From Octopus bimaculoides (Eukaryota), in contig NC_068983.1 in NCBI RefSeq assembly GCF_001194135.2, positions 105,633,610 to 105,697,609 on the forward strand: a stretch of 64,000 nt of DNA, in the 5' to 3' direction. The position numbers were made by a program, and so were the translations under genes. The notes beneath the pieces were generated by a model that saw nothing but the letters and a program-made list of their open reading frames with translations, was not told the origin of the DNA and did no database searches. Below, in pieces: positions 27,520 through 60,371 of this stretch; within the stretch, counting starts at the first letter, position 1; each line of letters opens with the position of its first letter.

Positions 27520-27589
27520 GTATGTCTGTGTGTGTGTGGATGTGTGTATAAGCACAGCTTGCTACAAATAATGTGTGCTATGTTTTTTT

Positions 27590-27629
<40 letters not shown>

Positions 27630-27631
<2 letters not shown>

Positions 27632-29119: not shown

Positions 29120-29486
29120 ATAATGGATTTTATACATTTATTAAAGGCTCACACATGTTTCTGGTAAATGTTGAAGGGAACTAGTGACATAGTTTAATCG
29201 TATTAATCAATCCATAGTCAATCGATTGAAACAAAACAAAAAAATAGAATACACTTCCTCAGACCCACAAATAGACTGACTGCCAAAAAAAAGGAATTTG
29301 GCCAAAATTGTCAGTCTTTTGCCAATCACTTTGTGGCTCTGAGGAAGATAAAGGTGTGAGACTGTACTCTTTTCTCCCTCCCAATCAATTAACTATAGAT
29401 TGATTGATTAATACGATGGAACTAGTCCCCTCTAACATTTATCAGAAACATGTGTAAGCCTTTAATAAATATATAAAATCCATTAT
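29120..29486. mobile_element. Foldback inverted-repeat element carrying hammerhead motifs (Penelope pLTR or retrozyme-like)
   Basis: Outer arms ~105 bp imperfect IR (29120-29229 / 29382-29486); inner IR blocks CTTCCTCAGA/TCTGAGGAAG, CCACAAA/TTTGTGG, AGACTGAC/GTCAGTCT. Confidence 0.7.
29335..29460 (+). ncRNA. Hammerhead ribozyme-like fold in the last AP1G1 intron, sense strand
   Basis: GGCT CTGAGGA A GATAAAGGT [~79 nt] ACATTTATC A GAAAC ATGT GTA | AGCC; 4-bp stem I, GUA site, A.A mismatch at the base of stem II. Confidence 0.6.
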
Positions 29487-29499
29487 CTGTTTGTGTGTG

Positions 29500-29533
<34 letters not shown>

Positions 29534-29929
29534 ATGTGCACACACATATATATATATATATATGTACATATATCTACACACATACTCGTACATATGAGTA
29601 TATGTGTAGATAAATGTACATATTGTATATATATGTATGTATGCACATATATATGTGTATGTATATTTATATAGTAATGTGATTAAAACAGACAGGATAT
29701 GTATGAAGGTGTGTGAGTGTACATGCACATATACATGTTCATTAGATGCTGAATAGTAATGGAGTGAAACATCAGCTTCAAAAAAAATAAATATATTCTA
29801 CTACATGTATTGACTATTCTATTTTCTGCTTGTATATGCAAACATATTCTACAGCTTGAAAGAACGAGGCAAACTATGACATTTTCCCCACCTCTAATAA
29901 CCACTTATTTATCTTTCAACTAATTTCAG

Positions 29930-30031
29930 CAACCTCTTCGTATGCGTATCAAGCTTTCATATTCCCAGAATGGCAACACAGTTACTGAGATGAGTGAAGT
30001 GAGCAACTTTCCGGAAAATCTGTGGCAATGA
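29930..30031 (+). CDS. AP1G1: AP1G1 terminal coding exon (QPLRMRIKLSYSQNGNTVTEMSEVSNFPENLWQ*)
   Basis: CAG acceptor; LRMRIKL..Y and NFP..W C-terminus; TGA at 30029-30031. Confidence 0.96.
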   Translation, partial: QPLRMRIKLSYSQNGNTVTEMSEVSNFPENLWQ

Positions 30032-30454
30032 TACAATAATCCCAAAGATATACCTGGCAGTTCCAGCAGGTTACAGATCTCTGTCTGTCTGTCTTTCTCC
30101 TCCTCTCTCCTCTCTTTCTCCCTCACCTCATTCTGCCTCATGAAAATACAGGCTTTTGCTTTCTGTCTTACCTTGTCTTTTTTTTTTTTTTTTTTTTTAA
30201 ACAATTATAGACAGGGAAGAAACTGCACTCCATTAATTTCAGTGACTGGATTTTAAACAGCTTGAATCTTACTTTGACTTCTACTTTTTTTTTATGTCTG
30301 TTCAATACCATCTCCTTTGCTGATGTCAATAACCATCTAATACATAGCAACAATGTTGTAAAAAGAAATATCAACTACCAAATCCTTTACAGATTTCCTG
30401 GAAGAAAAATTATATAAAATATATTGAGTAACCATTATATGAGTTTATTGATCA

Positions 30455-30460
30455 AATAAA
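30455..30460 (+). promoter_or_regulatory. Candidate polyadenylation signal of AP1G1
   Basis: AATAAA about 425 nt after the stop codon; further AATAAA sites near 30812 and 30871; usage unknown. Confidence 0.35.
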
Positions 30461-32697
30461 GGCACGGTGTTGATTAAACCTAACCCAGACATCCCTCCCT
30501 ATTCTCCACTTTTACTCAATTTTCTAAAGGGTATATATATATAATTAGCATACCCTTCCAACATATCTTTTTACAAAAATCACATACACAGAGGCATATG
30601 CTTATGTACACATATACATACTTATATGTATACACACACACATACATAAACACACATACATAAACATTATATATATATATGTACACAGATGTTCACAGAT
30701 GCGTTATATGTATATACACATATATATATATAATGACAATTATGAAGAAATATTTGTAGGTATGTAAATGAAAGAAAATATATTTGGGGTTGTAAAAAAA
30801 ATTATAATAATTAATAAAAACCACATACTTTATCTAAAATGAAATCATCTAACATCAGGATTTCACTGTAAATAAAAAAATATATGCCTCTCTGGCTGCT
30901 AAAGTGCTTGTATTATCAAATTGTCTTTTGCTGGGCAAATAAGAACTATTTCAATAGTTTCTTTCTCAATTTGATTAGGAACTTGTACCTTGTATTCTCT
31001 ATTTGCAAAACAGTATCTTCAAATTCAGTTCTTATAGTTTTATTATTCAGGTTATTTTCTTTCTAGAAATAATATTTAGTTTTGCTTTATCTTTTATTAG
31101 TCATTAAATTCCCACTTTTTTCCTTTCCTCCTTGGTCAGTAGTAATTTCCTTTTTTACACTCTATTTCATTTGAACTGTTTATGCTTTTTTTTAAATTTA
31201 AAACTTGTCTAGTTAAAATTGTCATTGTATTAATTCATAAACTTAGTCAATAAATACAATGAGATTTTTTTCTTTATTTTTTAATCATTTTTAATTTAAT
31301 TTTCTACTAGGTAAAATTAAGCGAAACAATCTCCAATTCAAGCTCGAGTTATTGACATACTTGTCATATCTGTAACATCTTTTTGTAAATTAATACTCTC
31401 CTATATGCTTGCTTGGAGAAATAATGTAAAATTATATTGACAGTGATTACATGAAAATTTGATTTTAAAAAAAATGAGATTCATTTAATGGGAATTGGTG
31501 ATTCAGATTGAGATATTAACTTTTCTATTGGAATTTTTTTCATTCTACACAATTTTACAACATCCAGAATTCACAGATAAACAAAAAGGGGAAGGCAAAT
31601 TAATTTTAAAAAAAGTTTAAAAGAAAGAAAATTACCATTAGCCCACAGGATGAAGTTTGTATAGATTATCAGTTGGATAATGAATTTGCAGTTATTACTG
31701 CCACTTCCCTTCATCAATGGTTTGGTATTTGATGTAGAGCTCAACTCTGTATTTGTTATTCAACATCTGTTCCTTCTACCATTTCCTCGTGTTGTCTACC
31801 ATTACATTAAATAAAACCTTGAAAGGTTTTTTTAAATAATAATAATAATAATAATAATACAGAAATTTTAAAGAAAATGCATAAAATTAAAGATAAAGAC
31901 ATAAAATATATTGTAAAATTTCTATTGCAAGAATGGAAACCAATCAGATATCATATTTGTATATGAAAGGAATTATCCCAACTATGTTTATCACTTATTT
32001 TATCTCCCCCTTCTCCTCCCACAACCTGTTAGGTATGCAACAATGTTTAAACTGATTGTCAAATCTTCATATTGAAAAAAATCAAACCAAAAGGACATTA
32101 AAAATAATTAAAAAAAAAAAATTAAAATGGGATCCTGTAGTTATTTGTTTCAAATTTTGGAAAAGGGAAACATACCTTTTAGAAGAAAGGGAAAGCATGA
32201 AGAATTGGAATTTTCATTACCAAGTATCATTCCAAGCCAAAATGTGTTCTCACAACTAAAATGTGTAATAAAGGTTTTAAAGTTGAATTTGCGTTTGTTA
32301 TATTTCCAGTTGATGATTTTAGTATAACATAACATGTCATGTTCTTACTTGTGAAACTGAAGTTCTCAGCAGCAGAATAAAACTATTGCCTAGCTCAGGG
32401 TTGTTAGATCAAGTTACACATATACTTAGGAATATGCAAGAGAGGCTGGAGGTATGTGAAGTTTGTGGGAACACTGGAACTTTAAAGTGAATTACAACTA
32501 GTGTGTCTAGAAATTGTGTGGAGAGACTTTTGCTGTTCCCATTCACTTGCTTTTGTGAACAAAGTGTTCAGCTACGTGACCAAACAAATTTTGTGCAAAA
32601 CTGTTGAGAAAGTTATGCATCTGTGCCTCACTGAAACTGTTCCCAGAAATACTTGTAAGAGCCGAACTCATCCATCTCATTAAGAATATAACATTTA

Positions 32698-32896
32698 CCC
32701 TTTAGCATTGAAACCAGCAATACTTGACTAAAATATTCTACAATTTTATGATCAAATTGGTCAGGTCTGGCTTCTTATACCTACCCTACAATATCTTTCT
32801 AAAAAATAAACAATCACATCGTTGAAATCTTGGAGCTATGAAATAATGTGAATAAATAAGCATTATATTTAACAGATTAATCTGAATGCTAAAGGG
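32698..32896. mobile_element. TTAA-type MITE, same family as 53519 in opposite orientation
   Basis: TTTA|CCCTTTAGCATT ... AATGCTAAAGGG|TTAA; another decayed copy near 18955-19135. Confidence 0.78.
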
Positions 32897-33722
32897 TTAA
32901 ATTAAAACAAAATTGATTTCTAACAAAGGTATAAGGCTAAAAATGTGGGGAGAGGGAACAATCAATATTACTCAGTAGTTTATTGTTACTTTCATTTATT
33001 GATTCTGGAAGCATAAAAAGCAAACTTGACCACCATGGGATTTGAACTCTTTAAATTAAGTAACAAATAATACATGCCTATTGCCTGTTCTACTGTATCC
33101 AAAGATTTTACAATATATTCTTCACACACATACCAACACTAGTAGACATGAAAGGGTATACTGAAAAAGTTGGTACCCTCTATCCTATAAAGACAAATAT
33201 TGGTGATATGGGGAAAGTGTTGGATTTTCAATTCATAGACATTAAAATCATAAGCCACTGAAGGTATTTTGTTCTCCAGTTTGTCAGTTTGACCTATCTC
33301 GATCCTTCAGGTACAAGGTAGCTAGAAGATTATTGAACCATTTCTTTCTCTCTCGTGTGTGTAGAAGAATGAATTGTTAATCTTTCCAATCCAACCGAAA
33401 ACATGATGTATCTGCATATTCCACTTGTAGTGGATAACTTGGCGACTGAAGAGCATTAGCAAGTTGATATGATTTTGATACACTACTGATATTACCTTTA
33501 AGATGAATCCTTAGATAACTATTCACATACATTATCAATATCATGTGTTTTCAAATACATACATAAATGCAGGTATGGCTATGTGGTAAGAAGCTTGCTT
33601 CCCAACTATATGGTTCCAGGTTCAGCCCCACTGCATGGCACCTTGGGTAAGTGTCTTCTACTATAGTCTCAGGACAAACAAAGCCTTGCAAGTGGATTTG
33701 GTAGACAGAAACTGATCATATA

Positions 33723-34567
33723 TGAGGTCTGATCAACATGTATCTGGACTGTTGCCATACTAACGAAGCTAAAGCACGCAGAGTGAAGCCACTTGGCACA
33801 GATTGACCTTGACTTCTGCTGTGCATGCACACTAAGTTGTAACGTTCTAGCTTTCTTTTCCTGTTTACAGCAGCACTTGGAAGTAACGTGATCATCGTCT
33901 TGACCATGACAGAAAAAGTTGTCATGGCAATACCTGCTCAGAGGCCTATACAAAGTTTCAGAAAGTGTATTAGTCACAGGTGTACGAGTGGTTCAAACGT
34001 TTCCAAGATGGCCAAAAAAATGTCGATAGTGATGAATGTTCTGGGAGACCTGCAACCAGCAGAACTGAGAAAAACTTCACAGATGTGCATGCAGCTATGA
34101 AGGGAAATCGTCAAATCACTATCTGTGAGTTATCAGAGGATGTGCAGATTAGTTATGATTCAGTTCAGTCCACTGAACTGAAGATTTGGGTATAAGATGC
34201 ATGTCTGCTGAGTTTGTGCCCAAACTGCTTTCAGCTGGCCAAAAAGACGCTCAGATTTCAATTGCACAAGATCTCCTTGGTTGTGTCAAGAATGATTAAA
34301 ACTTTGCATAGGCCTCGGAGCAGGTATTGCCAAGTTTTTGGCAAAATTTGATGCAGACTCTCTGCTCAACTTTCTCTGTCATGGTCAATGCAACAATCAC
34401 ACATTACTTCCAAGCACTACTGTCAACAGCGGAAGTGAGCTAGTATGTTAAAACTTAGTGCACATGCACAGCAGAGTTTAAAGTCAATCTGTGCCAAGTG
34501 GCTTCACTCTGGATGCTTTAACTTCATTACTATGGCAAGAGTCCGGATACTTATTGATTAGACCACA
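33723..34567 (+). mobile_element. Mariner-derived ~845-bp element whose right end is an inverted copy of the 5' end
   Basis: TA flanks; IR arms ~33723-33958 / 34299-34567; internal relic YEWFKRFQDG..SGRP; inserted into a SINE. Confidence 0.85.
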
Positions 34568-35689
34568 TATGTGTATATGTCTTTGTATCTGTGTTTGTCA
34601 CCCACCATGCTTGACAACCAGTGTTGGTCTGTTTACATCCCCTTAACTTAGTGGTTCGGCAAAAAAAATTGATACGATAAGTTCCAGGCTTAAAAAAAAC
34701 ATTGAAGTGGATTCATTCAACTAAAAATTCAAGCCTGTGCCCCAGCATGGCCACAGTCTAATGACTGAAATAAGTAAAAGATAGATACATATATGTTTTG
34801 ATATACATACATAACTGTTGATACCATCTAACACATTTTGTTGAAAAGTGGTTTTTCTACACAGACACAGTCATATCAAATAGTTAAAATATTTATTTAT
34901 AGACAATTGTAGTGAACCGTCAGCCTCTAACCATAACTGAACATTTGTATTGCATTCATATTAACTTTTCTATATTCTGGAAATTAATTTTAACTGCACA
35001 GATACAGTTCATAACTTTGTGTTGCCTATCTGTTATTTATGGGGATTGGCATCTACATCAGAATCTTTGTGTCTGTCTTCTCATTCATTATGACCAGATT
35101 TATCACTGGCGATCTGTTTCTTTCACTGTTTTTTCAAGAGTTGGTATGAAAGGCACCACCAAATTTATGTATGCAAGACAATTGTCATATGTAATATTAA
35201 TAGATGAGAAAGTACTGTGAATGGAATAGAAAATACATACAATAGATATAAAATAGAGTAATTCCATTATGTTCTCAGTTAAATTTCATAATTAAGATGA
35301 CATTGCAGTGAGAATCATTGGAAAATGCTACTAAAAATTTTATTGTAGCATAACTGAATGAAGTTAATATGATCAATGTTTGATAAGAATTATTAAAAGT
35401 TAAATGACTGGAGAAGAAATATGAGCATTAAAGGAGTTCTGGAAAGAAAGATTGAATATAACGTTTTACATGGATTCTCTGGTTGAGATCAGATAATGAA
35501 AGGATAAGTGACAGGTACTTTAAGTAAGGCTTAAGTAGAAATGATATGCAAAGAGTACTTTCAGAAATGAAGAAATTGTTGTATTTTGTAAGAGACAGAG
35601 AAAAATAGCATGCAATAATGAACCAGAATTAGCAAAGTGTAGAAGATTAAAGGCTTCTTTATCAGTGATAATTTGCCATTGCTTGCTCG

Positions 35690-36452: not shown

Positions 36453-37737
36453 TGAAGGGGTATCCTAAAGTAACCAGAAACGTTCTGTGGGACAAGCCTG
36501 TTCTGGTTCAGGCTTCTACTGCAATCCCCACCAATCAGTCTGCCAACTGGCTGAAGTAGTACTGTCATGTGGTGTGTCTTTGTTTTGCAGTGCCTCTCCC
36601 CCTGTTCATCGATTTTTGCAATGGCTAAAACAAAGGAACAATGTGCTTCCATGAAATTCTGTTTTCTGTTGGGAAAAACAATGGCTGAAACAGTTCTCAT
36701 GCTTCAAACAGCTTACAAGGACACTGTCACGAGTAAAACACAAGTTTACAAGTGGTTTTCAGACTTTATGAATAGTCACTTGTTGCCTGAAAACCAACCT
36801 TGTTTAGGGCAACTGTCAACCTCCTGAACAAATGAAAACATCACAAAAATTCATGAGCTGGTCCTGGAGGACTGTCACTGAACAATTGATGAACTTGTTG
36901 ATATGACTGGTGTGTCCTGGAGTTCCCCACCAATGAATTTTGAGTGAGAAATTGCAAATGAAAAGAGTTGCAGCAAAATTTGTGCCTCACTTGATCATGG
37001 AAGATCAAAAACAGTCATGACTGAATGTGTATCATGAACTGAAAGAACAGCTGGAAGTTGATCCAAATTGTTTTTCAAAGGTCATCACTGTTGACAAAAG
37101 CTGGTACTATGGTTACCATCCAGAAACAAAGCAGTAATCAAGTCAATGAAAGCATTCAATGTCATCATGCCTTCCAAAAAGTGTGTCAAGTGAAGTCCGA
37201 TGTCAAGACGATGCTGATTGGTTTCATTGATGTGAAAGGAATTGTTCACACAGTATTTGTTCCTCCTGGTCAAACTATTAGCCAGACATTTTACTTGGCA
37301 GTTCTGAAGCATTTGTGGTACACAACTAGACAAAAACGCCCTGACCAGTGGCAAAGTGGAGATTGGTGGGTTCATCACGGCAATGCACCTTTGCACACTA
37401 CCTTGAGTGTAAGACAGTTTTTCACCAAACATGGCATGAACCCCTTTACCTGGTCTCCCTATTCACCTGATCTTGTTCCCTGCGACTACTTTTTTTTTAT
37501 TATCCCAAATGAAAAAAGTTCTTAAAGGAAAACATTTTGCAGATGTGGAAGACATGAAGAAAAAACAATGGAGGTATTAAAAGGCATCACTTTTCAAGAG
37601 TTCTAGGACTGCTTCAAACAGTGGAAAATGCATTGTTTCAAATGGAGAATACTTTGAAGGCGATAAAAGTGTAAACATGTAAAGCTAAGTGAATAAAATA
37701 ATGTTTCAAAATTCTGGTTCCTTTTGGGTACCCCTCA
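36453..37737 (+). mobile_element. Full-length (~1.29 kb) degenerate mariner transposon
   Basis: TA on both flanks, ~30-bp imperfect TIRs (TGAAGGGGTATCC.. / ..GGTACCCCTCA); relic KFCFLLGKT HTH, HHGNAPLH and YSPDLVPCD motifs with stops and frameshifts. Confidence 0.92.
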
Positions 37738-39713
37738 TATGTAATAGGTATGTACTATTCCTTGCCATGGATTATCATCAAACATTCTCATTGGAAACTG
37801 TTAATGGACCTTATCTATAACTTTATCATTTTTTAAATCATGGAATTGTGTAACACATATCCTTTTCACTTTGATCCTTCCTTCATTTTGACAAACTGGA
37901 AAGTACTAACACCGTCAATTGGAGATATTTCTTCATTTTTCATATTTTTCTGACTTCTCCCCCTCTGGTGACAGAACACCTAGCTTATGGAATCCATACT
38001 CAATATCATGAGCCACATGCTTGGCTATTCTAGAAACAGCTGTAAGAGACTCTATATTCTCTTAAGTTAAATGTTTTTAAGAGATGCCAAATATTTTGCT
38101 TTTTGATTTTTTATTTTAATCTCTCTCTCACTCTCTGTCTGTATATCTATATATATATGTGTGTGTGTGTATATATATTTATATATATATATCTTCCCTC
38201 GTGGAGGTGGACATAATTCCCTTTTAATAATTATGAGATATCCTCTAGAGTTAGAGATAATTTTAATAAATCAAAAATTTTTGGTTACTGATATGTGTGT
38301 GTGTGTGTGTGTGTTAGTGTTTGTTCCCCACTATTGCTTGACAACTGGTGTTGATTTGTTTACCTCCTTGTAACTTAGCAGTTCAGCACAAGTGGCTGAT
38401 AAAATAAGTTTCTTAGCAAAAAAAAAAAAAGTACTGGGACTGATTTGTTTGACTAAACCCTTCAAGGCAGTGCTCCAGCATGACCACCGTTCAATGACTG
38501 AAAAATGAAAAAGATAAAAGAGGATACTCTGACCAGAGGATACATTCACTGAAATATTTTGATTATGGCAAGCAAGATGAGAAAACTAATTTGAATATAT
38601 CAAAATATAGTAATGTTAATTCCTTACTTCAGAAATTCAAACAAAATTTACCAAATATAATAATTATAAACTACTGTTGCACAAGAGCTAAAAAATCTAC
38701 AGGTACTTAGGAAATCAATTTTCTCAAATGCCTCAGAGGCTCTTTAGAGGTAGTGGATAATTTCTGCTACCTAGGAGACCTAATTAGTGGTGGGAGAGGA
38801 TGCACAGAAAGTGTAATTGGTGGGAGAGGATGCACAGAAAGTGTAATTGCTAGAATAAGAATAGGATGAAAAAAATTCAAAGAGCTTTTACCTTTGTTAG
38901 CAACCAAAGATCTCTCACTCTGAGTGAAAAGAAAATTGTATGATACATATATATGAACAGCTATGTAAGTCGATCATATCAACCCCAGTGCTCAACTGGT
39001 ATTTAGCATAACCTAATTTTGTTACAAAGAATATAAATACACAACCATATATCAGTTCACCTCTTTGCTAACTCAGCACCTACTAAGAGCACACATCTAT
39101 CTTCCTTCTGTTTGATAGCAATGGAGAAGCAACACCTTTATGCAAGGGACAAAACAACCATTACTGTTTCTATCTACCTTGTCTCTCTCTAGTAGTCTCA
39201 CAGATGACATACACAATGGTCTATAGAACTAGAGACAATTTGTCTACTGCAGTAACACACAATTTGTGTAGACACAACAACTTGATGAAGTTGTATTTTC
39301 TATATTGTAACAACTAACATAATAATCAGATAAATAAATGGCCATCTTAGTAAGCAATTAATATTGTTCCTATTCAATCATTAAAACAATGCATCAGTAC
39401 ACATTGATTTTTATACTTGGTGAACTTCTCACTGAAGAACTACATGCCTTCTCTACTAAATGCTGCTAAAATTGGTTCCTATATATGGTCATTACATGTA
39501 ATTCTTAGCACATCATTTAAAAATTTTAGACATACTTCAAGGGAGTTTTTATCAGTTAATTGCACGAATAAGCTCACTTGACTGAAGTTTTTCACCTCAC
39601 TATTCTATACAACCCCAAATGCATTGCTATATATATATATATATATATATTGTCAGTAAATCCTAAATCCAAAAAAGAAGTACACCCTAAGTTATAAAGC
39701 AGTAGAGTATATA

Positions 39714-39925
39714 GATAAAGATTTGGCCGGTTTATGGGGTTACCCTGGGTTTCACATCCATAAAGCTCTTAGCTTTACAGCGTTTCTTCAGACTTTAAAC
39801 CCATTGGCTTATGGCTAGAGAGACCATGGGCAAATGGGTTTAGGGTCTTAAGAAATGCTGTAAAGCTAAGCGCTTAATGGATGTGAAACCCAGGGTAACC
39901 CCGTAAACTGGTCATATCTATCTTT
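39714..39925. mobile_element. Foldback element made of two inverted hammerhead-like units
   Basis: ~95-100 bp imperfect arms with a short loop (CTAGAGAGA); adjacent to TA/TC microsatellites. Confidence 0.7.
39731..39800 (-). ncRNA. Hammerhead ribozyme-like fold (core intact, stem I eroded); crippled mirror copy on + at 39839-39907
   Basis: Minus strand: GT CTGAAGA [hairpin with TAAAGC/GCTTTA] GAAAC CCAGG GTA | AC; the plus copy has CTTAAGA but a better stem I (GGGT/ACCC). Confidence 0.6.
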
Positions 39926-39966
39926 ATCTCTCTCTCTCTCTCTATGTATATATATATATATATATA

Positions 39967-52604: not shown

Positions 52605-53074
52605 AGGAAAAGGACATCAAAAACCAAGGCAGGACGGGTATCTCAAGTCATTTACAATAATTTAATTAGGGTAAGATAAATATGAAGTCTTACAGCTGTT
52701 TCTGGGATATCCCAAGTGATAGGCTTGCATGTTTGTACACTGGATATTCCATCATCAGAGATAAAGTGAGTATGAATGAAAGTTCTAGACAGGGAAATTC
52801 AGTTTATATGGAATAAAATAGAAAAATAAAGAGTAAAAGTAAATATAAGAATAGACAGGATAATAAAAATTCACAGTCCATCTTTTTTCCAGAGGGTATG
52901 AAAGTTGGTCTGTACTTCCACGAAGGTAATAAGCCCTTATGCTTAACCCCAGGTAAATCCAGGCAGAATTTTCCCAGAAACAACTGTAAAACTTCAAATT
53001 AACCTTACCCTAATTAAATTATTATAAATGACTTGAGATACTTGTCCTTCCTTGGTTTTTGATGTCCTTTTCCT
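52605..53074. mobile_element. Foldback element with ~103-bp arms and a hammerhead
   Basis: Arms 52605-52707 / 52972-53074 imperfect IR; each arm begins at the stem II 3' strand/GAAAC part of the ribozyme. Confidence 0.7.
52688..52761 (-). ncRNA. Minimal type-I hammerhead ribozyme with short stem I
   Basis: Minus strand: TCT CTGATGA TGGAATATCC ... GGATATCCCA GAAAC AGCT GTA | AGA; 9/10 stem II pairs, palindromic ACAGCTGT, GUA site. Confidence 0.7.
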
Positions 53075-53738: not shown

Positions 53739-53836
53739 TTAAAGATGCTACTCTTATCAATTAGTATAATTGAATGTGCTTGGTTTATCCTTATGCCCAT
53801 TCTCCACTTTATATAAGTAAAATAGTGTTCATGCTA

Positions 53837-54240
53837 CAAGGTCTGACCAAAAAGAAACCATAAGTTTTAAAAAGCAGATTTTTTTGCTTTATACATTATC
53901 TAACTTGCCCCTTTAAAATAATTCCCTCTACTGTTGACAGATTGCTCCCAACATTTTTTTTTTTTTTGCTTGAATGCCTTAGAAAGTATTTTCAAAAGTA
54001 GGACGCAGTACTTGTTGCAAATTTTCTTCTATCATCTAAAATAGACAAACTGTTTTGGGTGGATTCAACTTTAAGAACAGGAAAAAAAAAATCTGCAGTG
54101 GGTCTAAATCTGGAGAGTAAGGCAGCTGAGAGACAAGAATTATCTGGTGCTTTGTCAAAAAGTCATAGTTAAATAGTGCTGTCATTGTGCCGCATCCAGG
54201 TTTTGTTTATCCACACCTCAAGCCTCTTCCATCACATTTC
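53837..54240 (-). mobile_element. Mariner 3' relic
   Basis: TA-CAAGGTCTGACC TIR-like end; minus-strand PTADFFF resembles the mariner DLAPxDFFLF motif. Confidence 0.5.
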
Positions 54241-55185
54241 CTTTATAATGCCTATTTGTTGTTTGACCATATGGATCAAACTCATTATAATAACAGCCAT
54301 CCAATAAAAAGACAACTCTTGCAATTATCCAAACTGCAAAAGATGCCTTCATGCATCACACAGCTCTTAAGCAATCTGGCCTCCCAAATTGCCACCAGTC
54401 CTCTGTCTCTTGTCAAAGAATCCCTACCATCTTTGCAGAACCTTCTTTTCCTCCATTTCTCAACTACAATGACTCAGTGACCAGCACTTCCACGCGTTAC
54501 CCACTTTGCACCCCACTCCACTCTATATACACTTGGCAAATTCCCTCCAAATCCATACCCTTCCTCCCTACTAGGGTTCCCCACTTTGTATACACATGGA
54601 CCAAATGTAGAAATACCTCCAATCACTTCAAACCAAAAAGGTCATTAGCCCATACAATGTTCCATTATCTTCAAATATCACACCACAAAGTTTGTCCATA
54701 CACAACAAACTCTTTAATTTCTCGCTCTCTATGTTATATTCTTTCTTGTTTTGTTCATATAATTTCCATTCTTTGTTTAATATATTGAAATACTGTGTCA
54801 GTATAATCTATCAACTGGCTTGTGTGGCTCTGCTTCATTTAACTAACACATGAAGTACTTAATGATTGACCATTGGCTAACCTGCTGGGTTCCGTTGGTG
54901 TCCATATATATCTTGATAAAAATGTAACCTTTATCTTCCTCAAAGTGAGCTTATTTTTTATGCGAGTTATTTTTTAAATGATTACCAAAACTACTCTTAA
55001 AACTCATAAAATTTCTCTTTTCTTTCTTTCATTTTTTTTTTCTGTGTCCATGTGTAGTCAGCAATGTCAATTCTTTTTATGGCTGTATTAAATAACCAAT
55101 ATAACTGATAATAACTGGAAAAACACTATTTACAATGGTTATTAATGCATGCATTTAATATACATATATATTTGTTATTTTCCAG

Positions 55186-55308
55186 ACATTGTCTACAGGA
55201 TTTGGTTATCTCAATAATGGGCAAATGAATAATATTCACCTGGAAGGAAATATTAGTCTCATTGAAAAACTTTTTGAGAGACAATATAATTATTCTTCAA
55301 ATGGTCAG
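55186..55308 (+). CDS. Putative internal exon of the unidentified gene (TLSTGFGYLNNGQMNNIHLEGNISLIEKLFERQYNYSSNGQ)
   Basis: Pyrimidine tract TTATTTTCCAG acceptor, CAG|GTAAGA donor, 123 nt open, phase 0-0, compatible with the 41410 exon. Confidence 0.6.
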
Positions 55309-56607
55309 GTAAGAATATATACAAGAATTAAAAAGTATATTGATTTTTTCTTTTTAAAGATATTTTAATGGTATGAATAAGGTGTAAAAACTTATAAACT
55401 CTTCAAATGAAACTCTTTAAATAAACTTTATGAAGTAATTTATCTTCACCATGACTCTTAAAAGTGTTTGTGGACTAGCTTAGTTACAGAGCACAAAAAG
55501 ACTCAACATAAACCATGATGCTGGTCTTTAGACAACACACATACACACACACACACAAACATATGTAACAAACTTGTGCAGTTTCCATCTGTCAAATTCC
55601 TCTCAGAAGCTATTGATCATGTGAGGCTATAACAGACACTTTCTCAGTGTGTTACACACCAAGATTGAACTGGAATCATGTGGCTGCAAAGCAGAATTCT
55701 TAATCATGAAGGTATGCCTGCATTTATGTCAACAAAATGTTATCAATGCATATAATTGCTGCTCACCTTGATTATGTAAGTTACCTAACTGGTAAGAGAT
55801 AATACCAATACCTGTATTTCTGAAGAAATATAGCAAAAATTATTACTTTTCACATACCTTTCAAAATTACTCAATTTCAATATTGGTAAAAGAATTTATC
55901 TCTCTAAATAAAATAATTTCAAATTTTTAGACTAACATTTTCATGTATCTCTGTTTTACATGATATTTTGATTGGTGTACTGTAGTATGTCTTTTTGTAT
56001 TTAATAACATATTCACAAGTTAGGTTTGAACACATAACCCTATTACATACAGTTTAAGAGTGTTCAAATACTATATTAGAAATAAAGCTACTAAGTTCAA
56101 ATCTAATCTAGAATATATTAATACATAGGACAAGGAGCAATTGTTGACAAGTTGAAGGATGTTAAACAAGTATGAAAATATAGAAATTTTAAAGTATTTT
56201 AATGAAAAATTCAGATATAAAATTTTGCCAAATTGTTTATAGAACAATATACAACTGAGGCCAACTGAAAATTTTCCAAATATGTTCATAATTTATATAT
56301 CAGATTCTTTCTGAATTTTTCCCACTGCTACTCAGACTCAGGTGCAAATTCTTAAAGGATGTATTGCCAGGTCATCAGATTATACATTAGTGTCCACTGT
56401 AGAATATTAGATCCACTACATATTATCTCTCTGTTTAGAGAACTTTAATGAAATGCATGTTGTTACATATAATTTCAGTAAAATGCTTCATGAATCTTGG
56501 TATATGGAAATTTGCCTGAATTTCCTCAAATAATTGTTTCAGCCTTGTCCTAATTAATTAGATCAGCAGCTGTTTATTAGTAAATGTATTGCTACATATT
56601 ATAGCAA

Positions 56608-56929
56608 TCATCATCATCATCATCGTCGTTTAACGTCCGCTTTCCATGCTAGCATGGGTTGGACGATTTGACTGAGGACTGGTGAAACCGGATGGCAACA
56701 CCAGGCTCCAATCTAATTTGGCAGAGTTTCTACAGCTGGATGCCCTTCCTAACGCCAACCACTCAGAGAGTGTAGTGGGTGCTTTTACGTGTCACCCGCA
56801 CGAAAATGGCCACGCTCAAAATGGTGTCTTTTATGTGCCACCCGCACAAGCCAGTCCAGGGGCACTGGCAACGATCTCACTCGAAAATCCTACGGGAGCC
56901 AGTCAGGCGGTACTGGCAACGGCCACGCT
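56608..56929 (-). mobile_element. RTE-type 3' UTR copy, truncated by a gap
   Basis: (CAT)n then GTTTAACGTCCGCTTTCCATGCTAGCATGGG..GGATGCCCTTCCTAACGCCAACC; near-identical to the 19.6-kb copy. Confidence 0.75.
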
Positions 56930-57689
56930 NNNNNNNNNNNNNNNNNNNNNNNNNNNNNNNNNNNNNNNNNNNNNNNNNNNNNNNNNNNNNNNNNNNNNNN
57001 NNNNNNNNNNNNNNNNNNNNNNNNNNNNNNNNNNNNNNNNNNNNNNNNNNNNNNNNNNNNNNNNNNNNNNNNNNNNNNNNNNNNNNNNNNNNNNNNNNNN
57101 NNNNNNNNNNNNNNNNNNNNNNNNNNNNNNNNNNNNNNNNNNNNNNNNNNNNNNNNNNNNNNNNNNNNNNNNNNNNNNNNNNNNNNNNNNNNNNNNNNNN
57201 NNNNNNNNNNNNNNNNNNNNNNNNNNNNNNNNNNNNNNNNNNNNNNNNNNNNNNNNNNNNNNNNNNNNNNNNNNNNNNNNNNNNNNNNNNNNNNNNNNNN
57301 NNNNNNNNNNNNNNNNNNNNNNNNNNNNNNNNNNNNNNNNNNNNNNNNNNNNNNNNNNNNNNNNNNNNNNNNNNNNNNNNNNNNNNNNNNNNNNNNNNNN
57401 NNNNNNNNNNNNNNNNNNNNNNNNNNNNNNNNNNNNNNNNNNNNNNNNNNNNNNNNNNNNNNNNNNNNNNNNNNNNNNNNNNNNNNNNNNNNNNNNNNNN
57501 NNNNNNNNNNNNNAAAAAAAAAAAAAAAGCCTTTTACTACTCAATATGTTCCTTTCTCTTCAGAAATAACCTTTTCGCTATTACTTCAAGCTATTACAGT
57601 GTTATATGCCACATCTGTATATTCTGCTTTCTCATTATTTATCAGTTTGTATATATATATATGTGTGTGTGTGTGTTGGTAACAAAGGG

Positions 57690-58413
57690 CCTCTTGCTCT
57701 GAGTGAAAGACAGACTATGATGCCTTTGTGCAAACAGTCATGCTACATGGCAGTGTAATATGGGCTGTGACTGCTGAGGACATATGTAGGCTTGAAAGAA
57801 AGGAAGCTAGTATGCTCCGCTGGATGTGTAATGTCAGTATGCATGCACAACAGTGTCAGTGTCTTGAGAGAAAAGTTGGACATAAAAAGCATCAGATGTG
57901 GCGTGCAAGATAGATGACTGCATTGGTATGGTCATGTGATACATATGAATGAGGAGAGCTGTGTGAAGAAGTGTTGCACTCTAATGGTGGAGGGAACCTG
58001 TGGAAGAGGTAGACCCAGGAAGACATGGGATGAGGTGGTGATGCACAATTTTCAAATGTTGGGCCTCACAGAGGATGACAAGCAACTGAGGCCGAGTGTG
58101 ATTGTAGTCACGGCTGATGCCAGTGTCATATAACTGGCCCATTAAAAGCATCCTTCAATTGTTGGGCGATATGCTGTGCTTGTGAAGACCTGTTGAACCG
58201 AGTGAAATTGTAGTTGTTGCTGGTGTTAATGGCACCCATGCTGGCAGCACATAAAAAGCACCCACTACACTCTTAGAGTGGTTGGCATTAGGAAGGGCAT
58301 CCAGCCGTAGAAACCTTGCCAAATCAGATTGGAACCTGGTGGAACCCCCAGCTTACCAGTTTTCAATGAAACCGTTCAACCCATGCCAGCATGGAAAGCA
58401 GATGTTAAATGAT
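57690..58413 (+). mobile_element. RTE-clade LINE 3' fragment
   Basis: ORF track: MLHGSVIWAVTAED..ASMLRWMCNV and EGTCGRGRPRKTWDEV; same 3' UTR as the 48.4-kb copy. Confidence 0.82.
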
Positions 58414-60117
58414 ATATATATATATATATAGATAGATAGATAGATATAGATATAAATATATATATCTGCTATTAATACAAACCTCCAGTGCATTTTGCAA
58501 TTCAATGTTGACAATTTTATGAAATTTAACAGCATGCATTATCTCCAATGAATATATAGAAAACTTCACAATGTTCTTGTTTAAGTATCTTTAAAAATGT
58601 TGTCTTGAGAAGACCATATTCTAAATTTAGCAAAGCCAATGTCAATGAAATGTTCTTTAGCTATGAATAATAAGTATACTTTTAAAAGAGCTGATTAAGA
58701 ATACCAGTCTTTCCAATCCAAGATTGTCTCATAACTCTATTCATTCTTTACAAATTGAAAAAACAAATCAGTAAAAATGTGTTGTTGTTTTTCTTATAAA
58801 TGTTTTAGTTAAATCATTTCTTGTGTATTAGGAAACTGAAATCATGAAAATAAAAGAAAAAGTTGACTTTTTTTTTACCTAATTCACTGACATGTTTTCC
58901 AAAACATATAAGAATTTGTGTTTGTCTTCAAATGTAATTTATAAGTTTAAAAAAATAGAAAAAAATAAAAATTTTTATATTTATTTTAGATTTTTACATT
59001 AAACTATATCCATTTTGTTACTATCAATCTACAGCCCATGATATTTTTTTAACAAAATACAAAATCCAATGCATTTATCAATTGCTTTCTTTATCTAAAC
59101 TTGATCTCTGTATTTCATGATGCAAAATGTAGCCAGAACTACATGAAAAATTAGAAAAATTTCAATCTATATTATTTAAAATATATTTTTCTAATGCCAA
59201 ATATTTACTTAGACTAGTTTCATGGAATTAAACAAGTGAGATTTAAATTTCCCTTTTATTTGATGTAAGTTTATTGCCGGTAAGATTCCTAGATGATCTG
59301 GTAGCTTTTCTCTACTGCTGAGTAAATAGCTATGTAATATCATCTTGTTCAGATGAAACATCTGCTGTTGATTTGAACTCTTACAACTGATGAGTGGTAA
59401 TGCAATACTTTGCCCACACAATTTCCAAACAGTTATACTTAAGAAGTACAATTTGTTGAAAGGTTAAGGTGCCAACTTTTGCTTTGTTGTTCCTGATTTC
59501 AAAATTCTATCCTAAATATTTCATGATTTTGCTGCCTGCCAACAGACCCAATCCGTCCACCTGACCCACTGACCTGACCTTCCTTCCTTTACTATTAATA
59601 GATAATGCACAGTAAAATTTGTAAAATATTTCTTATAAATTTTTCTTTTAGATTTTAAAAATGAACATAAATATTAAAATATTCTAAATGAGTAATGATA
59701 GCTAAGGAAGGAAAAGAAAATGTTTGGAGGCAAAGCTGTGTGATTAAGTAGTTCACTTTTTCATATGATTCTGGAATTGATTCCACTGCATAGCAACTTG
59801 GGCAAGTTTTTTTCTACCATAGCTTTGGGTGGATCAATACATTTTGAGTGGAATTTGATAGATAGAAACTGCATGGAAGCTTGTTTGTGTATGAGAGACC
59901 AGCAGAAAACAACCTGGAGTTTGGTTTCTGCTAGTGTAATATCATTGACTTGAAGCAAACTTTGATGTTGTCATGTAATCCCAGAAAGGCTATGATGAAA
60001 AGTGTTCTAGTCTTGATAATCTCATCATTTGTATATCACGAACTATAAATAAGACAAAAAAAAACATGAAGTACAATTAAACCTTGGGAGAGGCATTATG
60101 CCGGTAATAAACACACG

Positions 60118-60371
60118 CACTGGTTCAGTCCTTTATTAATTTATATAGTTTTTTGTTAAATTATTTCATTGCACTCTTGCAATCTCTTCAGTAACTTGTC
60201 TCTCCACTTCCATTTATTTTGAATGTATGATCTGGCGTTGTTTCGAAACAACGCCAGATCATACATTCAAAATAAATGGAAGTGGAGAGACAAGTTACTG
60301 AAGAGATTGCAAGAGTGCAATGCAATAATTTAACAAAAAACTATATAAATTAATAAAGGACTGAACCAGTG
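60118..60371. repeat. Loopless 254-bp palindrome centred on TTCGAA, truncated by a gap
   Basis: 127-bp arms with one mismatch (60166 vs 60323). Confidence 0.85.
60155..60195 (-). ncRNA. Degenerate hammerhead-like fold in a palindrome arm
   Basis: Minus strand: GTTA CTGAAGA G ATTGCA agag TGCAAT GAAA TAA TT | TAAC; lacks the C that should pair with G10.1. Confidence 0.35.

What the first reader, a model, noticed from the sequence alone, without database searches (positions are those of the whole stretch)
29120..60371. A set of sequence-unrelated hammerhead-ribozyme elements, mostly foldbacks, across one 31-kb span
Seen: six segments (29.3, 39.8, 42.0, 46.7, 52.7, 60.2 kb) with no obvious flanking similarity each give CUGANGA, a paired stem II, GAAA, a tiny stem III and NUH, with the bases after the site pairing with those before CUGA. 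Stems differ between copies but stay complementary, which is covariation-like. Five sit in 100-130 bp inverted-repeat arms, and at 46.7 and 52.7 kb the second arm starts at the stem II 3' strand/GAAAC. Established: minimal type-I hammerheads with palindromic loop III occur in Penelope-like element pseudo-LTRs and retrozymes, can cleave as dimers, and Penelope insertions often carry inverted partial pLTRs. Inference: several short, non-coding, ribozyme-bearing retroelement families have colonised this genome at high density. Whether they are already described for this species cannot be judged here.
Basis: partly seen in the sequence, partly recalled or inferred. Interest (0 to 1): 0.9.

Follow-up and report, generated by a model that had tools for sequence, protein, structure and literature searches.

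The report
Hammerhead-ribozyme retroelement fragments, inverted pairs
Four of the six flagged sites are truncated copies of four unrelated, high-copy retroelement families that carry a minimal hammerhead-ribozyme motif near their 3' end and sit as head-to-head inverted pairs, a pattern already described for Penelope-like retrotransposons of animals; one site is doubtful and one is a chance match.

Summary
Five inverted repeats with 100-130 nt arms are real. The six segments share no sequence. A type-I minimal hammerhead can be drawn convincingly at 39.8, 46.7, 52.7 and 60.2 kb.

With a descriptor built from published criteria, the real core boxes give exactly these four sites. 719 scrambled-core decoys give a mean of 0.17 and a maximum of 3.

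All four sites belong to repeat families with hundreds to thousands of copies. In those families:
- CUGANGA varies mainly at N7.
- The 52.7 kb family consensus restores a 4-bp helix I.
- Helix II of the 39.8 kb family shows a compensatory A-U to G-C change.
- Helix III is palindromic or nearly so.

The 42.0 kb site is single-copy and fits badly, so I treat it as chance. The 29.3 kb site is an old, low-copy foldback with a non-canonical core junction and cannot be verified.

The foldbacks are not MITEs. Each is two 5'-truncated copies joined head to head, with 3' ends outward and the ribozyme 26-90 nt from the end. This is the known signature of Penelope-like element insertion.

No RT/GIY-YIG ORF was linked to them. 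No Rfam hammerhead model matches. RNA-seq shows no ends at the predicted cut sites.

Verdict: new members of a known kind, of modest interest.

The parts
46636..46822 (-). 46.7 kb, longer copy: the 3' part of a high-copy retroelement family, 5'-truncated at about 46822.
   Evidence: Thousands of contigs and reads match it. The family continues beyond 46822 with GAGAACTGTAGTTGGAGAAG.... The junction is confirmed by single-copy unitigs 46795-46847.
46691..46780 (-). Minimal type-I hammerhead. Helix I 46780-75/46696-91; CUGAAGA 46774-68; helix II 46767-58/46718-09; GAAA 46708-05; C-AUAU-G 46704-699; U16.1 46698; H17=U 46697; predicted cut 46697|46696.
   Evidence: It is the only hit of the strict flush descriptor. 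Family variation falls at N7 (46770, ~6%), at H17 (46697, giving GUC in ~14% of DNA reads), and as AUAU to AU. 46781 G>A extends helix I.
46818..46929 (+). 46.7 kb, shorter inverted copy. It starts inside loop II, lacks CUGAAGA, and reads GAAAC-AU-GUU.
52605..52850 (-). 52.7 kb, longer copy of a second high-copy family. The 5' limit is approximate and taken from read depth.
   Evidence: Depth declines towards the 5' end and peaks at 52688-52723.
52687..52762 (-). Minimal hammerhead. Helix I 52762-59/52690-87 (window AUCU, family GUCU, pairing with AGAC); CUGAUGA 52758-52; helix II 52751-42/52712-03; GAAA 52702-699; C-AGCU-G 52698-93; U16.1 52692; H17=A 52691; predicted cut 52691|52690.
   Evidence: 52762 T>C in 95% of family reads restores the 4-bp helix I. 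One sub-family has a compact GGGAUAU-AAUAA-AUAUCCC helix II.
52972..53074 (+). 52.7 kb, shorter inverted copy. It starts at CCCA-GAAAC-AACU-GUA and has no CUGAUGA.
39711..39823 (-). 39.8 kb, left copy of a third family.
   Evidence: Depth is 300-340 at 39726-39761 but 10 or less at the foldback centre.
39739..39793 (-). Minimal hammerhead. Helix I GU/AC 39793-92/39740-39; CUGAAGA 39791-85; unpaired A 39784; helix II 39783-73/39765-54 (11 bp, one bulged A); GAAA 39753-50; CCCAGGG 39749-43; U16.1 39742; H17=A 39741; predicted cut 39741|39740.
   Evidence: Sub-families read CUGAUGA, CUGACGA or CUGAAGA. AAAG/CUUU versus AAGG/CCUU is a compensatory change. 39739 G>A (41%) would give a GGAU/AUCC helix I.
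39824..39927 (+). 39.8 kb, right inverted copy with a dead core, CUUAAGA (G5 to U).
60072..60249 (-). 60.2 kb, left copy of a fourth, very abundant and homogeneous family. It is 5'-truncated inside a natural GTTTCGAAAC palindrome.
   Evidence: the family boundary is at 60072, and loose ends at 60248/9 continue with TGTTTGGTATGAGC...
60155..60195 (-). Minimal hammerhead-like motif. Helix I GUUA/UAAC 60195-92/60158-55; CUGAAGA 60191-85; unpaired G 60184; helix II AUUGCA/UGCAAU 60183-78/60173-68; GAAA 60167-64; UAA; U16.1 60160; H17=U 60159; predicted cut 60159|60158.
   Evidence: The minimum-energy fold is exactly helix I plus helix II. The family is too uniform for a covariation test.
60245..60371 (+). 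60.2 kb, right inverted copy, 99% identical to the left. It reads GCAAU where the left copy has GAAAU, and it runs into the gap at 60372.
   Evidence: The authenticity of the palindrome is unverified.
29107..29499 (.). 29.3 kb: an old, low-copy foldback, with arms 79% alike and about 74% over the whole length. Both halves carry CUGAGGA and GAAACAUGUGU.
29335..29460 (+). Doubtful hammerhead-like motif. GGCU 29335-38; CUGAGGA 29339-45; A; GAUAAA 29347-52; ... UUUAUC 29438-43; extra A 29444; GAAA 29445-48; C-AUGU-G; U 29455; A 29456; AGCC 29457-60.
   Evidence: It passes only the laxer descriptor and fails the published-style one. The centre of the foldback is single-copy. In the left-arm copy H17 is G and the helices are broken.
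42006..42057 (-). A chance match to the hammerhead boxes. It is not part of the system.
   Evidence: It is single-copy: one X1 contig at depth 46 and no relatives at 82% or more. It fails both descriptors.

Best explanation
WHAT THEY ARE
The sites at 39.8, 46.7, 52.7 and 60.2 kb, and possibly 29.3 kb, are dead-on-arrival insertions of four or five unrelated families of Penelope-like retroelements (PLEs) or PLE-dependent derivatives.

WHAT IS SHOWN
- Each family's RNA carries a minimal type-I hammerhead a few tens of nucleotides upstream of the point where copies end.
- The motif has the CUGANGA box, a long helix II, the GAAA box, a helix III reduced to 1-2 bp with a self-complementary loop, an NUH triplet and a short helix I.
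- Copies are 5'-truncated and sit as head-to-head inverted pairs with their 3' ends outward.

INFERRED MECHANISM
- The element's RT/GIY-YIG protein cuts both strands of a target, often a TA-rich microsatellite.
- It primes reverse transcription on both strands from an internal site just downstream of the ribozyme.
- Both cDNAs stop early, and their 5' ends are joined at short microhomologies.
- The result is two 5'-truncated copies head to head, seen as a foldback with 100-130 nt arms.

INFERRED ROLE OF THE RIBOZYME
- It is expected to act only weakly, and as a dimer formed through the palindromic helix III between tandem copies in a full-length element's transcript.
- In these truncated single or inverted copies it is most likely a non-functional passenger.
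For: MOTIF ABOVE CHANCE
The real core gives 4 sites, against a decoy mean of 0.14-0.17 and a maximum of 3.

STEMS ARE INTRINSIC TO ONE COPY
Both strands of helices I and II lie within a single copy. They are not produced by the large inverted repeat (coordinates).

FAMILY-LEVEL EVIDENCE
- 46.7 kb: the core varies only at N7, H17 varies between U and C, and the loop is AUAU or AU, so it stays palindromic.
- 52.7 kb: the family majority base at 52762 restores the GUCU/AGAC helix I. One sub-family has a different, compact helix II with the same 3' box.
- 39.8 kb: N7 is A, U or C. AAAG/CUUU versus AAGG/CCUU is a compensatory change. GGAU before CUGA is matched by a 41% AUCC variant after the cut site.
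- In three families read depth peaks on the 3' half of the ribozyme.

FEATURES NOT REQUIRED BY MY DESCRIPTOR
- ACAUAUGU and ACAGCUGU are perfect palindromes.
- ACCC-A-GGGU and AU-A-AU are palindromes around a central A.A mismatch.
- An extra nucleotide after A9 is present at 39.8 and 60.2 kb.
- These are the authenticity criteria listed in PMC4209133.

RETROELEMENT RATHER THAN MITE
- Depth falls towards the 5' end, and the foldback centres and junctions are unique to this locus.
- The 46.7 and 60.2 kb families continue upstream into sequence absent from the window.
- In five of five foldbacks the ribozyme's sense strand points outward.

AGREEMENT WITH PUBLISHED PLE BIOLOGY
- An inverted 5'-truncated copy next to the element, and a microsatellite target bias (PMC8557442).
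- A purified PLE protein cleaves and extends both target strands and starts reverse transcription internally, roughly 85-90 nt downstream of the hammerhead cut site (derived from PMC11167929).
- Pairs of minimal hammerheads 100-700 bp apart on opposite strands, thousands per genome, and highly heterogeneous (PMC4209133).
Against: - No RT or GIY-YIG ORF was found in the window or linked to any of the families. ORFs of 55 aa or more show only mariner-type transposase matches.
- No Rfam hammerhead model matches, even at E<=10 on 71-81 nt stretches.
- RNA-seq coverage is continuous across all predicted cut sites. There is no pile-up of read ends and there are no circular junctions at the cut sites. 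The same is reported for a bona fide PLE (PMC11167929).
- G10.1-C11.1, which is highly conserved in published PLE hammerheads, is present only at 46.7 kb. A G-C pair is also present at 29.3 kb, but offset by the extra A.
- A large 52.7 kb sub-family reads CCGAUGA (U4 to C), which should inactivate the ribozyme.
- The 46.7 and 60.2 kb families are so homogeneous that conservation of the core says little.
- Helix I is only 2-3 bp in the window copies at 39.8 and 52.7 kb.
- Both descriptors were written after I had seen the candidates.
Confidence: 0.7

Rival explanations
1. The foldbacks are MITEs or foldback DNA transposons, or generic long hairpins. The hammerhead boxes are chance matches, helped by AT-rich sequence and local palindromes.
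For: - Long inverted repeats flanked by TA-rich sequence.
- The 60.2 kb hairpin scores sub-threshold against plant MITE-type miRNA hairpin models.
- No Rfam hammerhead hit.
- The window does contain a true terminal-inverted-repeat element (33717-34573) and a foldback without hammerhead boxes (47947-48224).
- The 42.0 kb site shows that chance matches do occur.
Against: - Family copies do not share the foldback. Depth collapses at the centres and junctions, and most copies continue into other sequence. A MITE family would be covered uniformly.
- The ribozyme helices lie within one arm or copy, not between the arms.
- Decoy cores in the same sequence, with the inverted repeats left intact, give a mean of 0.17 against 4 for the real core.
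- N7-only variation and compensatory change occur within families.
Confidence: 0.08
2. The elements are hammerhead-bearing non-autonomous retroelements that are not PLE-derived. Candidates are schistosome Sm-alpha-like SINEs mobilised by LINEs, or metazoan non-LTR retrozymes that spread through circular RNA.
For: - The hammerhead motif and high copy number are as in the best explanation.
- No PLE ORF was linked.
- Octopus repeat annotation lists about 900 unclassified SINE families (PMC13282606). This applies only if the window is from an octopus, which I infer but did not test.
- Animal retrozymes are themselves proposed to be PLE derivatives (bioRxiv 10.64898/2026.07.22.740005), so the boundary between the two is blurred.
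Against: - The window holds no tandem head-to-tail repeats with one ribozyme per unit.
- There are no back-joined RNA reads at the cut sites.
- The 3' ends carry no poly(A) or LINE-type tail.
- Both arms carry the same 3' terminus, which means priming on both target strands. L1-type twin priming would invert an internal 5' segment instead.
- The helices are of the minimal PLE kind (long helix II, short helix I), not the canonical 6-bp/4-bp kind with loop-loop contacts that is typical of retrozymes (PMC4209133, PMC7229834).
Confidence: 0.17
3. Part of what was seen is an assembly artefact. The perfect zero-spacer palindrome at 60118-60371 ends at a gap, and the one at 47947-48224 does too. Both could be contig-end fold-back misassemblies.
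For: - The 60.2 kb arms are 99% identical with no spacer. The turn lies inside a natural 10-nt palindrome, and the right arm abuts the gap at 60372.
- The 47.9 kb palindrome even includes inverted microsatellite flanks and ends at the gap at 48225.
Against: - The 60.2 kb arms differ at one base, GAAAU versus GCAAU.
- The hammerhead-bearing family itself exists in hundreds to thousands of copies independently of this assembly.
- The other foldbacks are confirmed by independent contigs.
Confidence: 0.3

Closest known systems
Minimal hammerhead ribozymes of Penelope-like elements (Cervera & de la Pena 2014, PMC4209133; Lunse, Weinberg & Breaker 2017, cited in PMC6765202 and not read here)
   Same: - Type-I topology with the CUGANGA and GAAA boxes.
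- A long helix II (6-11 bp) and a short helix I (2-6 bp).
- Helix III reduced to 1-2 bp with a palindromic loop, implying action as a dimer.
- An extra nucleotide after A9 in two of the four sites.
- Many heterogeneous families per genome, mostly single truncated motifs.
- Pairs on opposite strands 100-700 bp apart.
- No detectable RNA ends at the cut site.
   Different: - The G10.1-C11.1 pair is present in only one of the four sites.
- Helix II at 46.7, 52.7 and 29.3 kb carries a 30-85 nt loop.
- The host appears to be a cephalopod. That is my inference. No hammerhead catalogue for such a host turned up in the searched literature.
- No pLTR/ORF context was shown.
PLE insertion architecture and mechanism (Craig et al. 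2021, PMC8557442; Frangieh et al. 2024, PMC11167929)
   Same: - An inverted 5'-truncated partner copy forming inverted repeats.
- Insertion next to (TA)n or (TG)n microsatellites.
- The 3' end of copies lies a few tens of nucleotides downstream of the hammerhead.
- Both target strands are used as primers.
   Different: - Here both partners are short, at 100-250 nt.
- The 30-40 bp 'tail' could not be identified with confidence.
- No target-site duplications were identified.
Metazoan non-LTR retrozymes (Cervera & de la Pena 2020, PMC7229834; Li et al. 2026 preprint, 10.64898/2026.07.22.740005)
   Same: Non-coding, hammerhead-bearing, type-I motifs with a weak helix III. They are proposed to be PLE derivatives.
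   Different: Retrozymes are tandem direct repeats that yield small circular RNAs. Here there are no tandem units and no circular junctions.
Schistosome Sm-alpha/Sj-alpha SINE-like elements with a hammerhead (cited in PMC6765202)
   Same: High-copy short retroposons carrying a type-I hammerhead.
   Different: Those have a pol III promoter head and a canonical, active hammerhead. Neither was shown here.
MITEs / foldback transposons
   Same: Long inverted repeats of a few hundred bp next to TA-rich sequence.
   Different: The families are not foldbacks as units. The junctions are locus-specific and the 5' ends vary.

Membership tests
Hammerhead ribozyme (catalytic core) | C3-U4-G5-A6-N7-G8-A9 box | tested here: met
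   - Present at all six sites.
- Within the 39.8 and 46.7 kb families the variation seen is at N7.
- Exception: a 52.7 kb sub-family reads CCGAUGA.
Hammerhead ribozyme (catalytic core) | G12-A13-A14, an A15.1-U16.1 pair, and H17 not G, followed by the helix I 3' strand | tested here: met
   - Met at 39.8, 46.7, 52.7 and 60.2 kb.
- 29.3 kb needs an extra A before G12.
- The left-arm copy at 29.3 kb has H17 = G.
Hammerhead ribozyme (catalytic core) | Three helices closing the core, supported by covariation | tested here: inconclusive
   - Helices can be drawn for four sites.
- A compensatory change was seen only in helix II of the 39.8 kb family.
- Pairing-restoring majority bases were seen in helix I at 52.7 and 39.8 kb.
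- Linkage between variants could not be established from pile-ups, and no R-scape-type test was possible.
Hammerhead ribozyme (catalytic core) | Match to a curated covariance model (Rfam Hammerhead_1, _3, _II, HH9, HH10) | tested here: not met
   - No hit at gathering score or at E<=10, on the whole window or on 71-81 nt stretches.
- These models describe canonical hammerheads, not the minimal ones.
Hammerhead ribozyme (catalytic core) | Site-specific self-cleavage | not testable with these tools
   - Standard RNA-seq shows continuous coverage and no pile-up of ends at the predicted sites.
- The same is reported for a proven PLE hammerhead (PMC11167929), so this is uninformative.
PLE minimal hammerhead (PMC4209133) | Helix II longer than canonical, helix I short, loop 1 undefined | tested here: met
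   Helix II is 6-11 bp and helix I is 2-6 bp.
PLE minimal hammerhead (PMC4209133) | [quoted passage not shown] | tested here: inconclusive
   - Present at 39.8 kb (A, or U in sub-families) and at 60.2 kb (G).
- Absent at 46.7 kb.
- Ambiguous at 52.7 kb, where the U or C can pair.
PLE minimal hammerhead (PMC4209133) | A conserved G10.1-C11.1 pair | tested here: inconclusive
   - G-C at 46.7 kb.
- A-U at 39.8 and 60.2 kb.
- U-A at 52.7 kb, with G-C as the next pair.
PLE minimal hammerhead (PMC4209133) | Palindromic 15.2-16.2 and loop 3 | tested here: met
   - ACAUAUGU and ACAGCUGU are perfect palindromes.
- ACCCAGGGU and AUAAU are palindromic around a central A.
- Cofolding forms helix III in trans for 39.8 and 46.7 kb.
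Penelope-like element | An ORF with a telomerase-like RT plus a GIY-YIG endonuclease, flanked by pLTRs that hold the hammerhead | not tested
   - No such ORF is in the window.
- The upstream parts of the families could not be retrieved with these tools.
Penelope-like element | Insertions with an inverted 5'-truncated copy, variable 5' truncation, and a microsatellite target | tested here: met
   - Five head-to-head pairs with 3' ends outward.
- 5'-ward decline in depth and locus-specific junctions.
- (TA)n or (TG)n flanks at 29.3, 39.8, 46.7 and 52.7 kb.
Non-LTR retrozyme | Tandem head-to-tail units, each with a hammerhead, yielding circular RNA | tested here: not met
   - No tandem copies in the window.
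- No back-joints at the cut sites in RNA reads.
MITE | Uniform unit bounded by terminal inverted repeats and a fixed target-site duplication, shared by all copies | tested here: not met
   - Depth is 10 or less at the 39.8 kb centre against 300-340 in the arm.
- Most 46.7 and 60.2 kb copies continue into other sequence.

The most novel reading that the evidence does not exclude
Hammerhead-bearing, PLE-type 3' fragments may form a large and so far unrecognised share of the 'unclassified SINE/unknown' repeats of this apparently cephalopod genome, at 10^3-10^4 copies per family. Because insertion on both target strands builds inverted pairs, these elements could be a systematic source of the double-stranded RNA that ADAR hyper-edits. 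The 60.2 kb family shows dense RNA-only A>G and T>C changes. A bolder variant is that some of these minimal ribozymes are active in vivo and shape transcript ends.
Probability: 0.25. Interest if true: 0.55.

Novelty: new member of a known kind. Interest (0 to 1): 0.3.

Why it matters
The finding extends the known association between Penelope-like retroelements and minimal hammerhead ribozymes to another animal genome. It shows four unrelated families of hundreds to thousands of copies within one 31-kb stretch.

It also gives a mechanistic reading of the many 200-500 bp foldbacks in this genome. They would be by-products of retro-insertion on both strands rather than MITEs.

This matters in practice for repeat annotation, because such fragments are easily filed as MITEs, miRNA-like hairpins or unclassified SINEs. 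It also matters for interpreting hyper-edited dsRNA.

It does not reveal a new kind of ribozyme or a new mobility mechanism.

Tried and rejected
- Rfam at gathering score and at E<=10 on the whole window, and on short stretches round 60.2 and 39.8 kb, gave no hammerhead hit. The only hits were generic hairpin and microsatellite matches to miRNA models.
- A strict flush descriptor found only the 46.7 kb site, plus three overlapping non-A15.1 solutions at a single CUGACGA site near 41.8 kb, which I dismissed.
- I looked for other copies of each element inside the window and found none.
- I searched the window for the upstream extension of the 46.7 kb family and found none.
- I looked for RT/GIY-YIG ORFs. 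ORFs of 55 aa or more gave only mariner-type transposase matches. Peptides that I recalled as looking like LINE RT tails gave no Pfam hit.
- I looked for RNA ends or circular junctions at the predicted cut sites in three raw RNA-seq runs, using a raw DNA run as control. None was found.
- I tried to verify the 60.2 kb palindrome from reads. This is not possible: the arms are identical, and k-mer contigs cannot cross a perfect palindrome.
- Lunse et al. 2017 (PMC5785218) is not held in the library.
- I considered and rejected the MITE reading, L1-type twin priming (which has the wrong geometry), and retrozyme tandem arrays.

Full report
**The sequence and its gaps.** The window is AT-rich (about 30-35% G+C) and full of microsatellites and repeats. 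It looks like an invertebrate nuclear genome. I suspect a cephalopod, from a SINE-like sequence I recall and from dense RNA editing, but the tools hide organism names and I did not test this. The finding's 31 kb is a scaffold with gaps at 42279-43250, 45434-45737, 46409-46418, 48225-48398, 49291-49390 and 56930-57513, and a further gap begins at 60372. None of the six motifs and none of the repeat arms spans a gap. The right arm at 60.2 kb, however, runs directly into the gap at 60372. Spacing and density are therefore approximate. The elements are independent insertions, so continuity across the gaps does not matter for what they are. Contigs from other public runs reproduce several parts:
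- the whole 29.3 kb foldback (930-nt contig, no differences);
- the centre and right arm at 39.8 kb;
- the 42.0 kb stretch;
- the 46.7 kb head-to-head junction, at single-copy depth (unitigs 46795-46829 and 46800-46847).

**The inverted repeats.** Five of the six sites lie in real inverted repeats: 29107-29211/29395-29499, 39711-39814/39824-39927, 46636-46749/46818-46929, 52605-52707/52972-53074 and 60118-60244/60245-60371. The six segments share no similarity with each other. CUGANGA occurs 35 times in the window on both strands, which is ordinary for a heptamer of that composition. Any signal must therefore come from the combination of boxes and helices.

**The motifs, read base by base.**
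- 46.7 kb (- strand) is a textbook minimal type-I hammerhead: AUUUCC-CUGAAGA-GAAGAUUACA...UGUAAUCUUC-GAAAC-AUAU-GUU|GGAAAU.
- 52.7 kb (-): (A)UCU-CUGAUGA-UGGAAUAUCC...GGGAUAUCCCA-GAAAC-AGCU-GUA|AGAC.
- 39.8 kb (-): GU-CUGAAGA-A-ACGCUGUAAAG-CUAAGAG-CUUUAUGGAUGU-GAAA-CCCAGGG-UA|AC. I first undervalued this site, until I saw that helix II is 11 bp with one bulged A.
- 60.2 kb (-): GUUA-CUGAAGA-G-AUUGCA-AGAG-UGCAAU-GAAA-UAA-UU|UAAC. Its minimum-energy fold is exactly helix I plus helix II.
- 29.3 kb (+) needs an extra A between helix II and G12, and a 6-bp helix closing an ~85-nt loop.
- 42.0 kb (-) has a helix II of 1 bp + a 7-nt bulge + 5 bp, and a 1-bp helix III.

In every case both strands of helices I and II lie inside a single copy. 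The large inverted repeat does not create them.

**Chance.** Shuffling would destroy the inverted repeats, so I kept the sequence and scrambled the core boxes instead. That gave 180 permutations of CUGA.GA times 4 of GAAA, or 719 decoys.
- A lax descriptor gives 4 real sites (29.3, 46.7, 52.7, 60.2 kb) against a decoy mean of 0.14 and a maximum of 3.
- A second descriptor follows the published features: an optional nucleotide after A9, helix II of 6 bp or more with at most one defect, and helix I of 2 bp or more. It gives exactly 39.8, 46.7, 52.7 and 60.2 kb, against a decoy mean of 0.17 and a maximum of 3.
- Both descriptors were written after I had seen the candidates, so the contrast is somewhat inflated.
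- Features that neither descriptor required point the same way. ACAUAUGU and ACAGCUGU are perfect palindromes. ACCC-A-GGGU and AU-A-AU are palindromes around a central A. Two sites have the extra nucleotide after A9.
- No Rfam hammerhead model matches at any threshold. Those models describe canonical hammerheads, not the minimal kind.

**Family evidence.** Public DNA runs of the same organism were laid on each element.
- *42.0 kb* is single-copy, with one contig at depth 46 and no relatives at 82% or more. Together with the poor fit, this makes it a chance match.
- *29.3 kb* has a single-copy centre and only a few ~83-85% relatives of its arms. It is an old element that cannot be tested. One relative reads GAAAC-AUAU-GUA.
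- *The other four* are abundant. A raw-read run sampled at about 1% gives depths of about 300 to 1600 where single-copy sequence gives 0-2. Summed contig depths suggest thousands of copies.
- *46.7 kb family:* the only core position varying at a few per cent or more is N7 (46770). H17 is U, or C in about 14% of DNA reads, which gives the classic GUC triplet. The loop is AUAU or AU, palindromic either way. 46781 G>A adds a U-A pair to helix I. The family is young, so this conservation is weak evidence.
- *52.7 kb family:* 95% of reads carry C at 52762, which turns the window's AUCU into GUCU and gives a 4-bp GUCU/AGAC helix I. The consensus is therefore a better ribozyme than the window copy. 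A sub-family replaces the long helix II by a compact GGGAUAU-AAUAA-AUAUCCC while keeping GAAAC-AGCU-GUA. The consensus of that sub-family reads CCGAUGA, a core mutation.
- *39.8 kb family:* sub-families read CUGAAGA, CUGAUGA and CUGACGA. Helix II shows AAAG/CUUU against AAGG/CCUU, a double compensatory change. CCA and CUG both pair with UGG. A 41% variant, AUCC, after the cut site matches GGAU before CUGA. Linkage between these variants could not be checked.
- *60.2 kb family* is too uniform to test.
- In three families read depth peaks on the 3' half of the ribozyme.

**What the foldbacks are.** They are not MITEs. At 39.8 kb depth is 300-340 in the arm but 10 or less at the centre. At 52.7 kb depth falls steadily towards the 5' end, taken in ribozyme orientation. 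Most copies of the 46.7 and 60.2 kb families run on, beyond the window's turning point, into sequence that the window lacks. Each locus is therefore two independently 5'-truncated copies joined head to head. The shared 3' terminus lies on the outside and the ribozyme lies 26-90 nt from it. In all five foldbacks the sense strand points outward. The shorter partner often lacks the 5' box: at 46.7 kb it starts in loop II, and at 52.7 kb it starts at CCCA-GAAAC. In other cases it carries a dead box, CUUAAGA at 39.8 kb and GCAAU in place of GAAAU at 60.2 kb. The flanks are (TA)n or (TG)n microsatellites at 29.3, 39.8, 46.7 and 52.7 kb.

**Comparison with what is known.**
- Cervera and de la Pena (PMC4209133) described minimal hammerheads in the pseudo-LTRs of Penelope-like elements. 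They report a long helix II, a short helix I, an extra nucleotide after position 9, and palindromic 15.2-16.2/loop 3. They find thousands per metazoan genome, extreme heterogeneity and mostly single truncated motifs. Some occur as pairs 100-700 bp apart on opposite strands. Activity in vitro is low and seen only in dimers.
- Craig et al. (PMC8557442) describe the inverted 5'-truncated partner copy and the microsatellite target bias.
- Frangieh et al. (PMC11167929) showed that a purified PLE protein cleaves and extends both target strands. It starts reverse transcription internally, which I derive to be about 85-90 nt downstream of the hammerhead cut site. Hammerhead mutants insert normally. 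RNA-seq shows no ends at the hammerhead site.

The window's elements fit this picture in geometry, motif style and RNA behaviour. In three raw RNA runs coverage is continuous over the cut sites, with no pile-up of ends and no circular junctions there.

What I could not show is the defining protein context. No RT/GIY-YIG ORF is in the window, and the upstream parts of the families are out of reach of these tools. PLEs are annotated in octopus genomes (PMC13282606). A literature search for hammerhead ribozymes in octopus found no catalogue of them.

**Verdict.**
Hammerhead-bearing retroelement families at high copy number and PLE-type inverted partials are supported. 'Short, non-coding' and any catalytic activity are unproven.
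- The most likely mechanism is retro-insertion by a PLE enzyme on both target strands, producing dead-on-arrival inverted 3' fragments in which the ribozyme is a passenger. My confidence in this is about 0.7.
- These are new members of a known kind, and interest is modest.

**Noticed along the way.** Transcripts of the 60.2 kb family carry dense RNA-only A>G and T>C changes, consistent with ADAR hyper-editing of dsRNA formed by such inverted pairs. That link may be worth a genome-wide look.

Noticed in passing
window 60072-60220: RNA reads of the 60.2 kb repeat family carry dense T>C and A>G differences that are absent from DNA reads. At 60097, T>C is seen in 133/336 RNA reads against 2/1580 DNA reads. 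At 60163, A>G is seen in 46/222 RNA reads against 0/437 DNA reads. Overall there are 25 T>C and 10 A>G places in RNA, against 1 and 1 in DNA. This looks like ADAR A-to-I hyper-editing of transcripts from both strands. The other three families do not show it (compared).
   Followed up: partly
window 60163-60227: A 'goes back 65' joint (60227 joined to 60163 with one A between) is seen in 19 RNA reads and in no DNA reads or contigs. It does not coincide with the predicted cut site at 60159|60158. It is probably an expressed copy with a 65-nt tandem duplication, but it remains unexplained.
   Followed up: no
window 47947-48224: This is a foldback with 112-nt arms 99% alike and a 54-nt spacer. It has no CUGANGA box. 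Its palindrome includes inverted (CA)n(TA)n flanks and ends exactly at the gap at 48225. It is either a contig-end fold-back artefact or a non-hammerhead foldback.
   Followed up: partly
window 33717-34573 and 37058-37525: The first is a mariner-like DNA transposon remnant, with 174-nt terminal inverted repeats (82% alike) around a fragment that I read, from recall, as a helix-turn-helix (weak sub-threshold Pfam match only). The second is a separate ORF with Transposase_1/DDE_3 matches, just under the Pfam cut-off.
   Followed up: partly
window 52703-52758 (family level): A large sub-family of the 52.7 kb element (124 loose-end reads) has a compact helix II, but its consensus core reads CCGAUGA (U4 to C). 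This should inactivate the ribozyme, and suggests that catalysis is not needed for spread.
   Followed up: no
window 46500-46560, 46940-47050, 39915-39950: Other very high-copy repeats flank the hammerhead elements. Summed contig depth reaches 870,000, and the 39915-39950 stretch is a CTAT/CT-type simple repeat. The elements therefore sit in a mosaic of nested repeats.
   Followed up: no
window 60131-60359: Sub-threshold Rfam hits to the plant miRNA hairpin families MIR2630 (104 bits against a gathering score of 144), MIR1023 and mir-2574 are generic long-hairpin matches to the perfect palindrome. They are not evidence of a miRNA gene. Many mir-297/466-type hits elsewhere are (TG)n/(TA)n microsatellites.
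   Followed up: yes
loose ends at 46818, 39944, 60132 in run X23: The palindromic string AGGTTCGTCCATCGATCGATGGACGAACCT recurs as a read extension at unrelated places. It is a linker from that sequencing library, not genome sequence.
   Followed up: no
window 27385-27723: An ORF with a weak, sub-threshold match to the adaptin C-terminal domain (PF02883, E = 4e-5). It may be an exon of a host gene upstream of the repeat-rich stretch.
   Followed up: no
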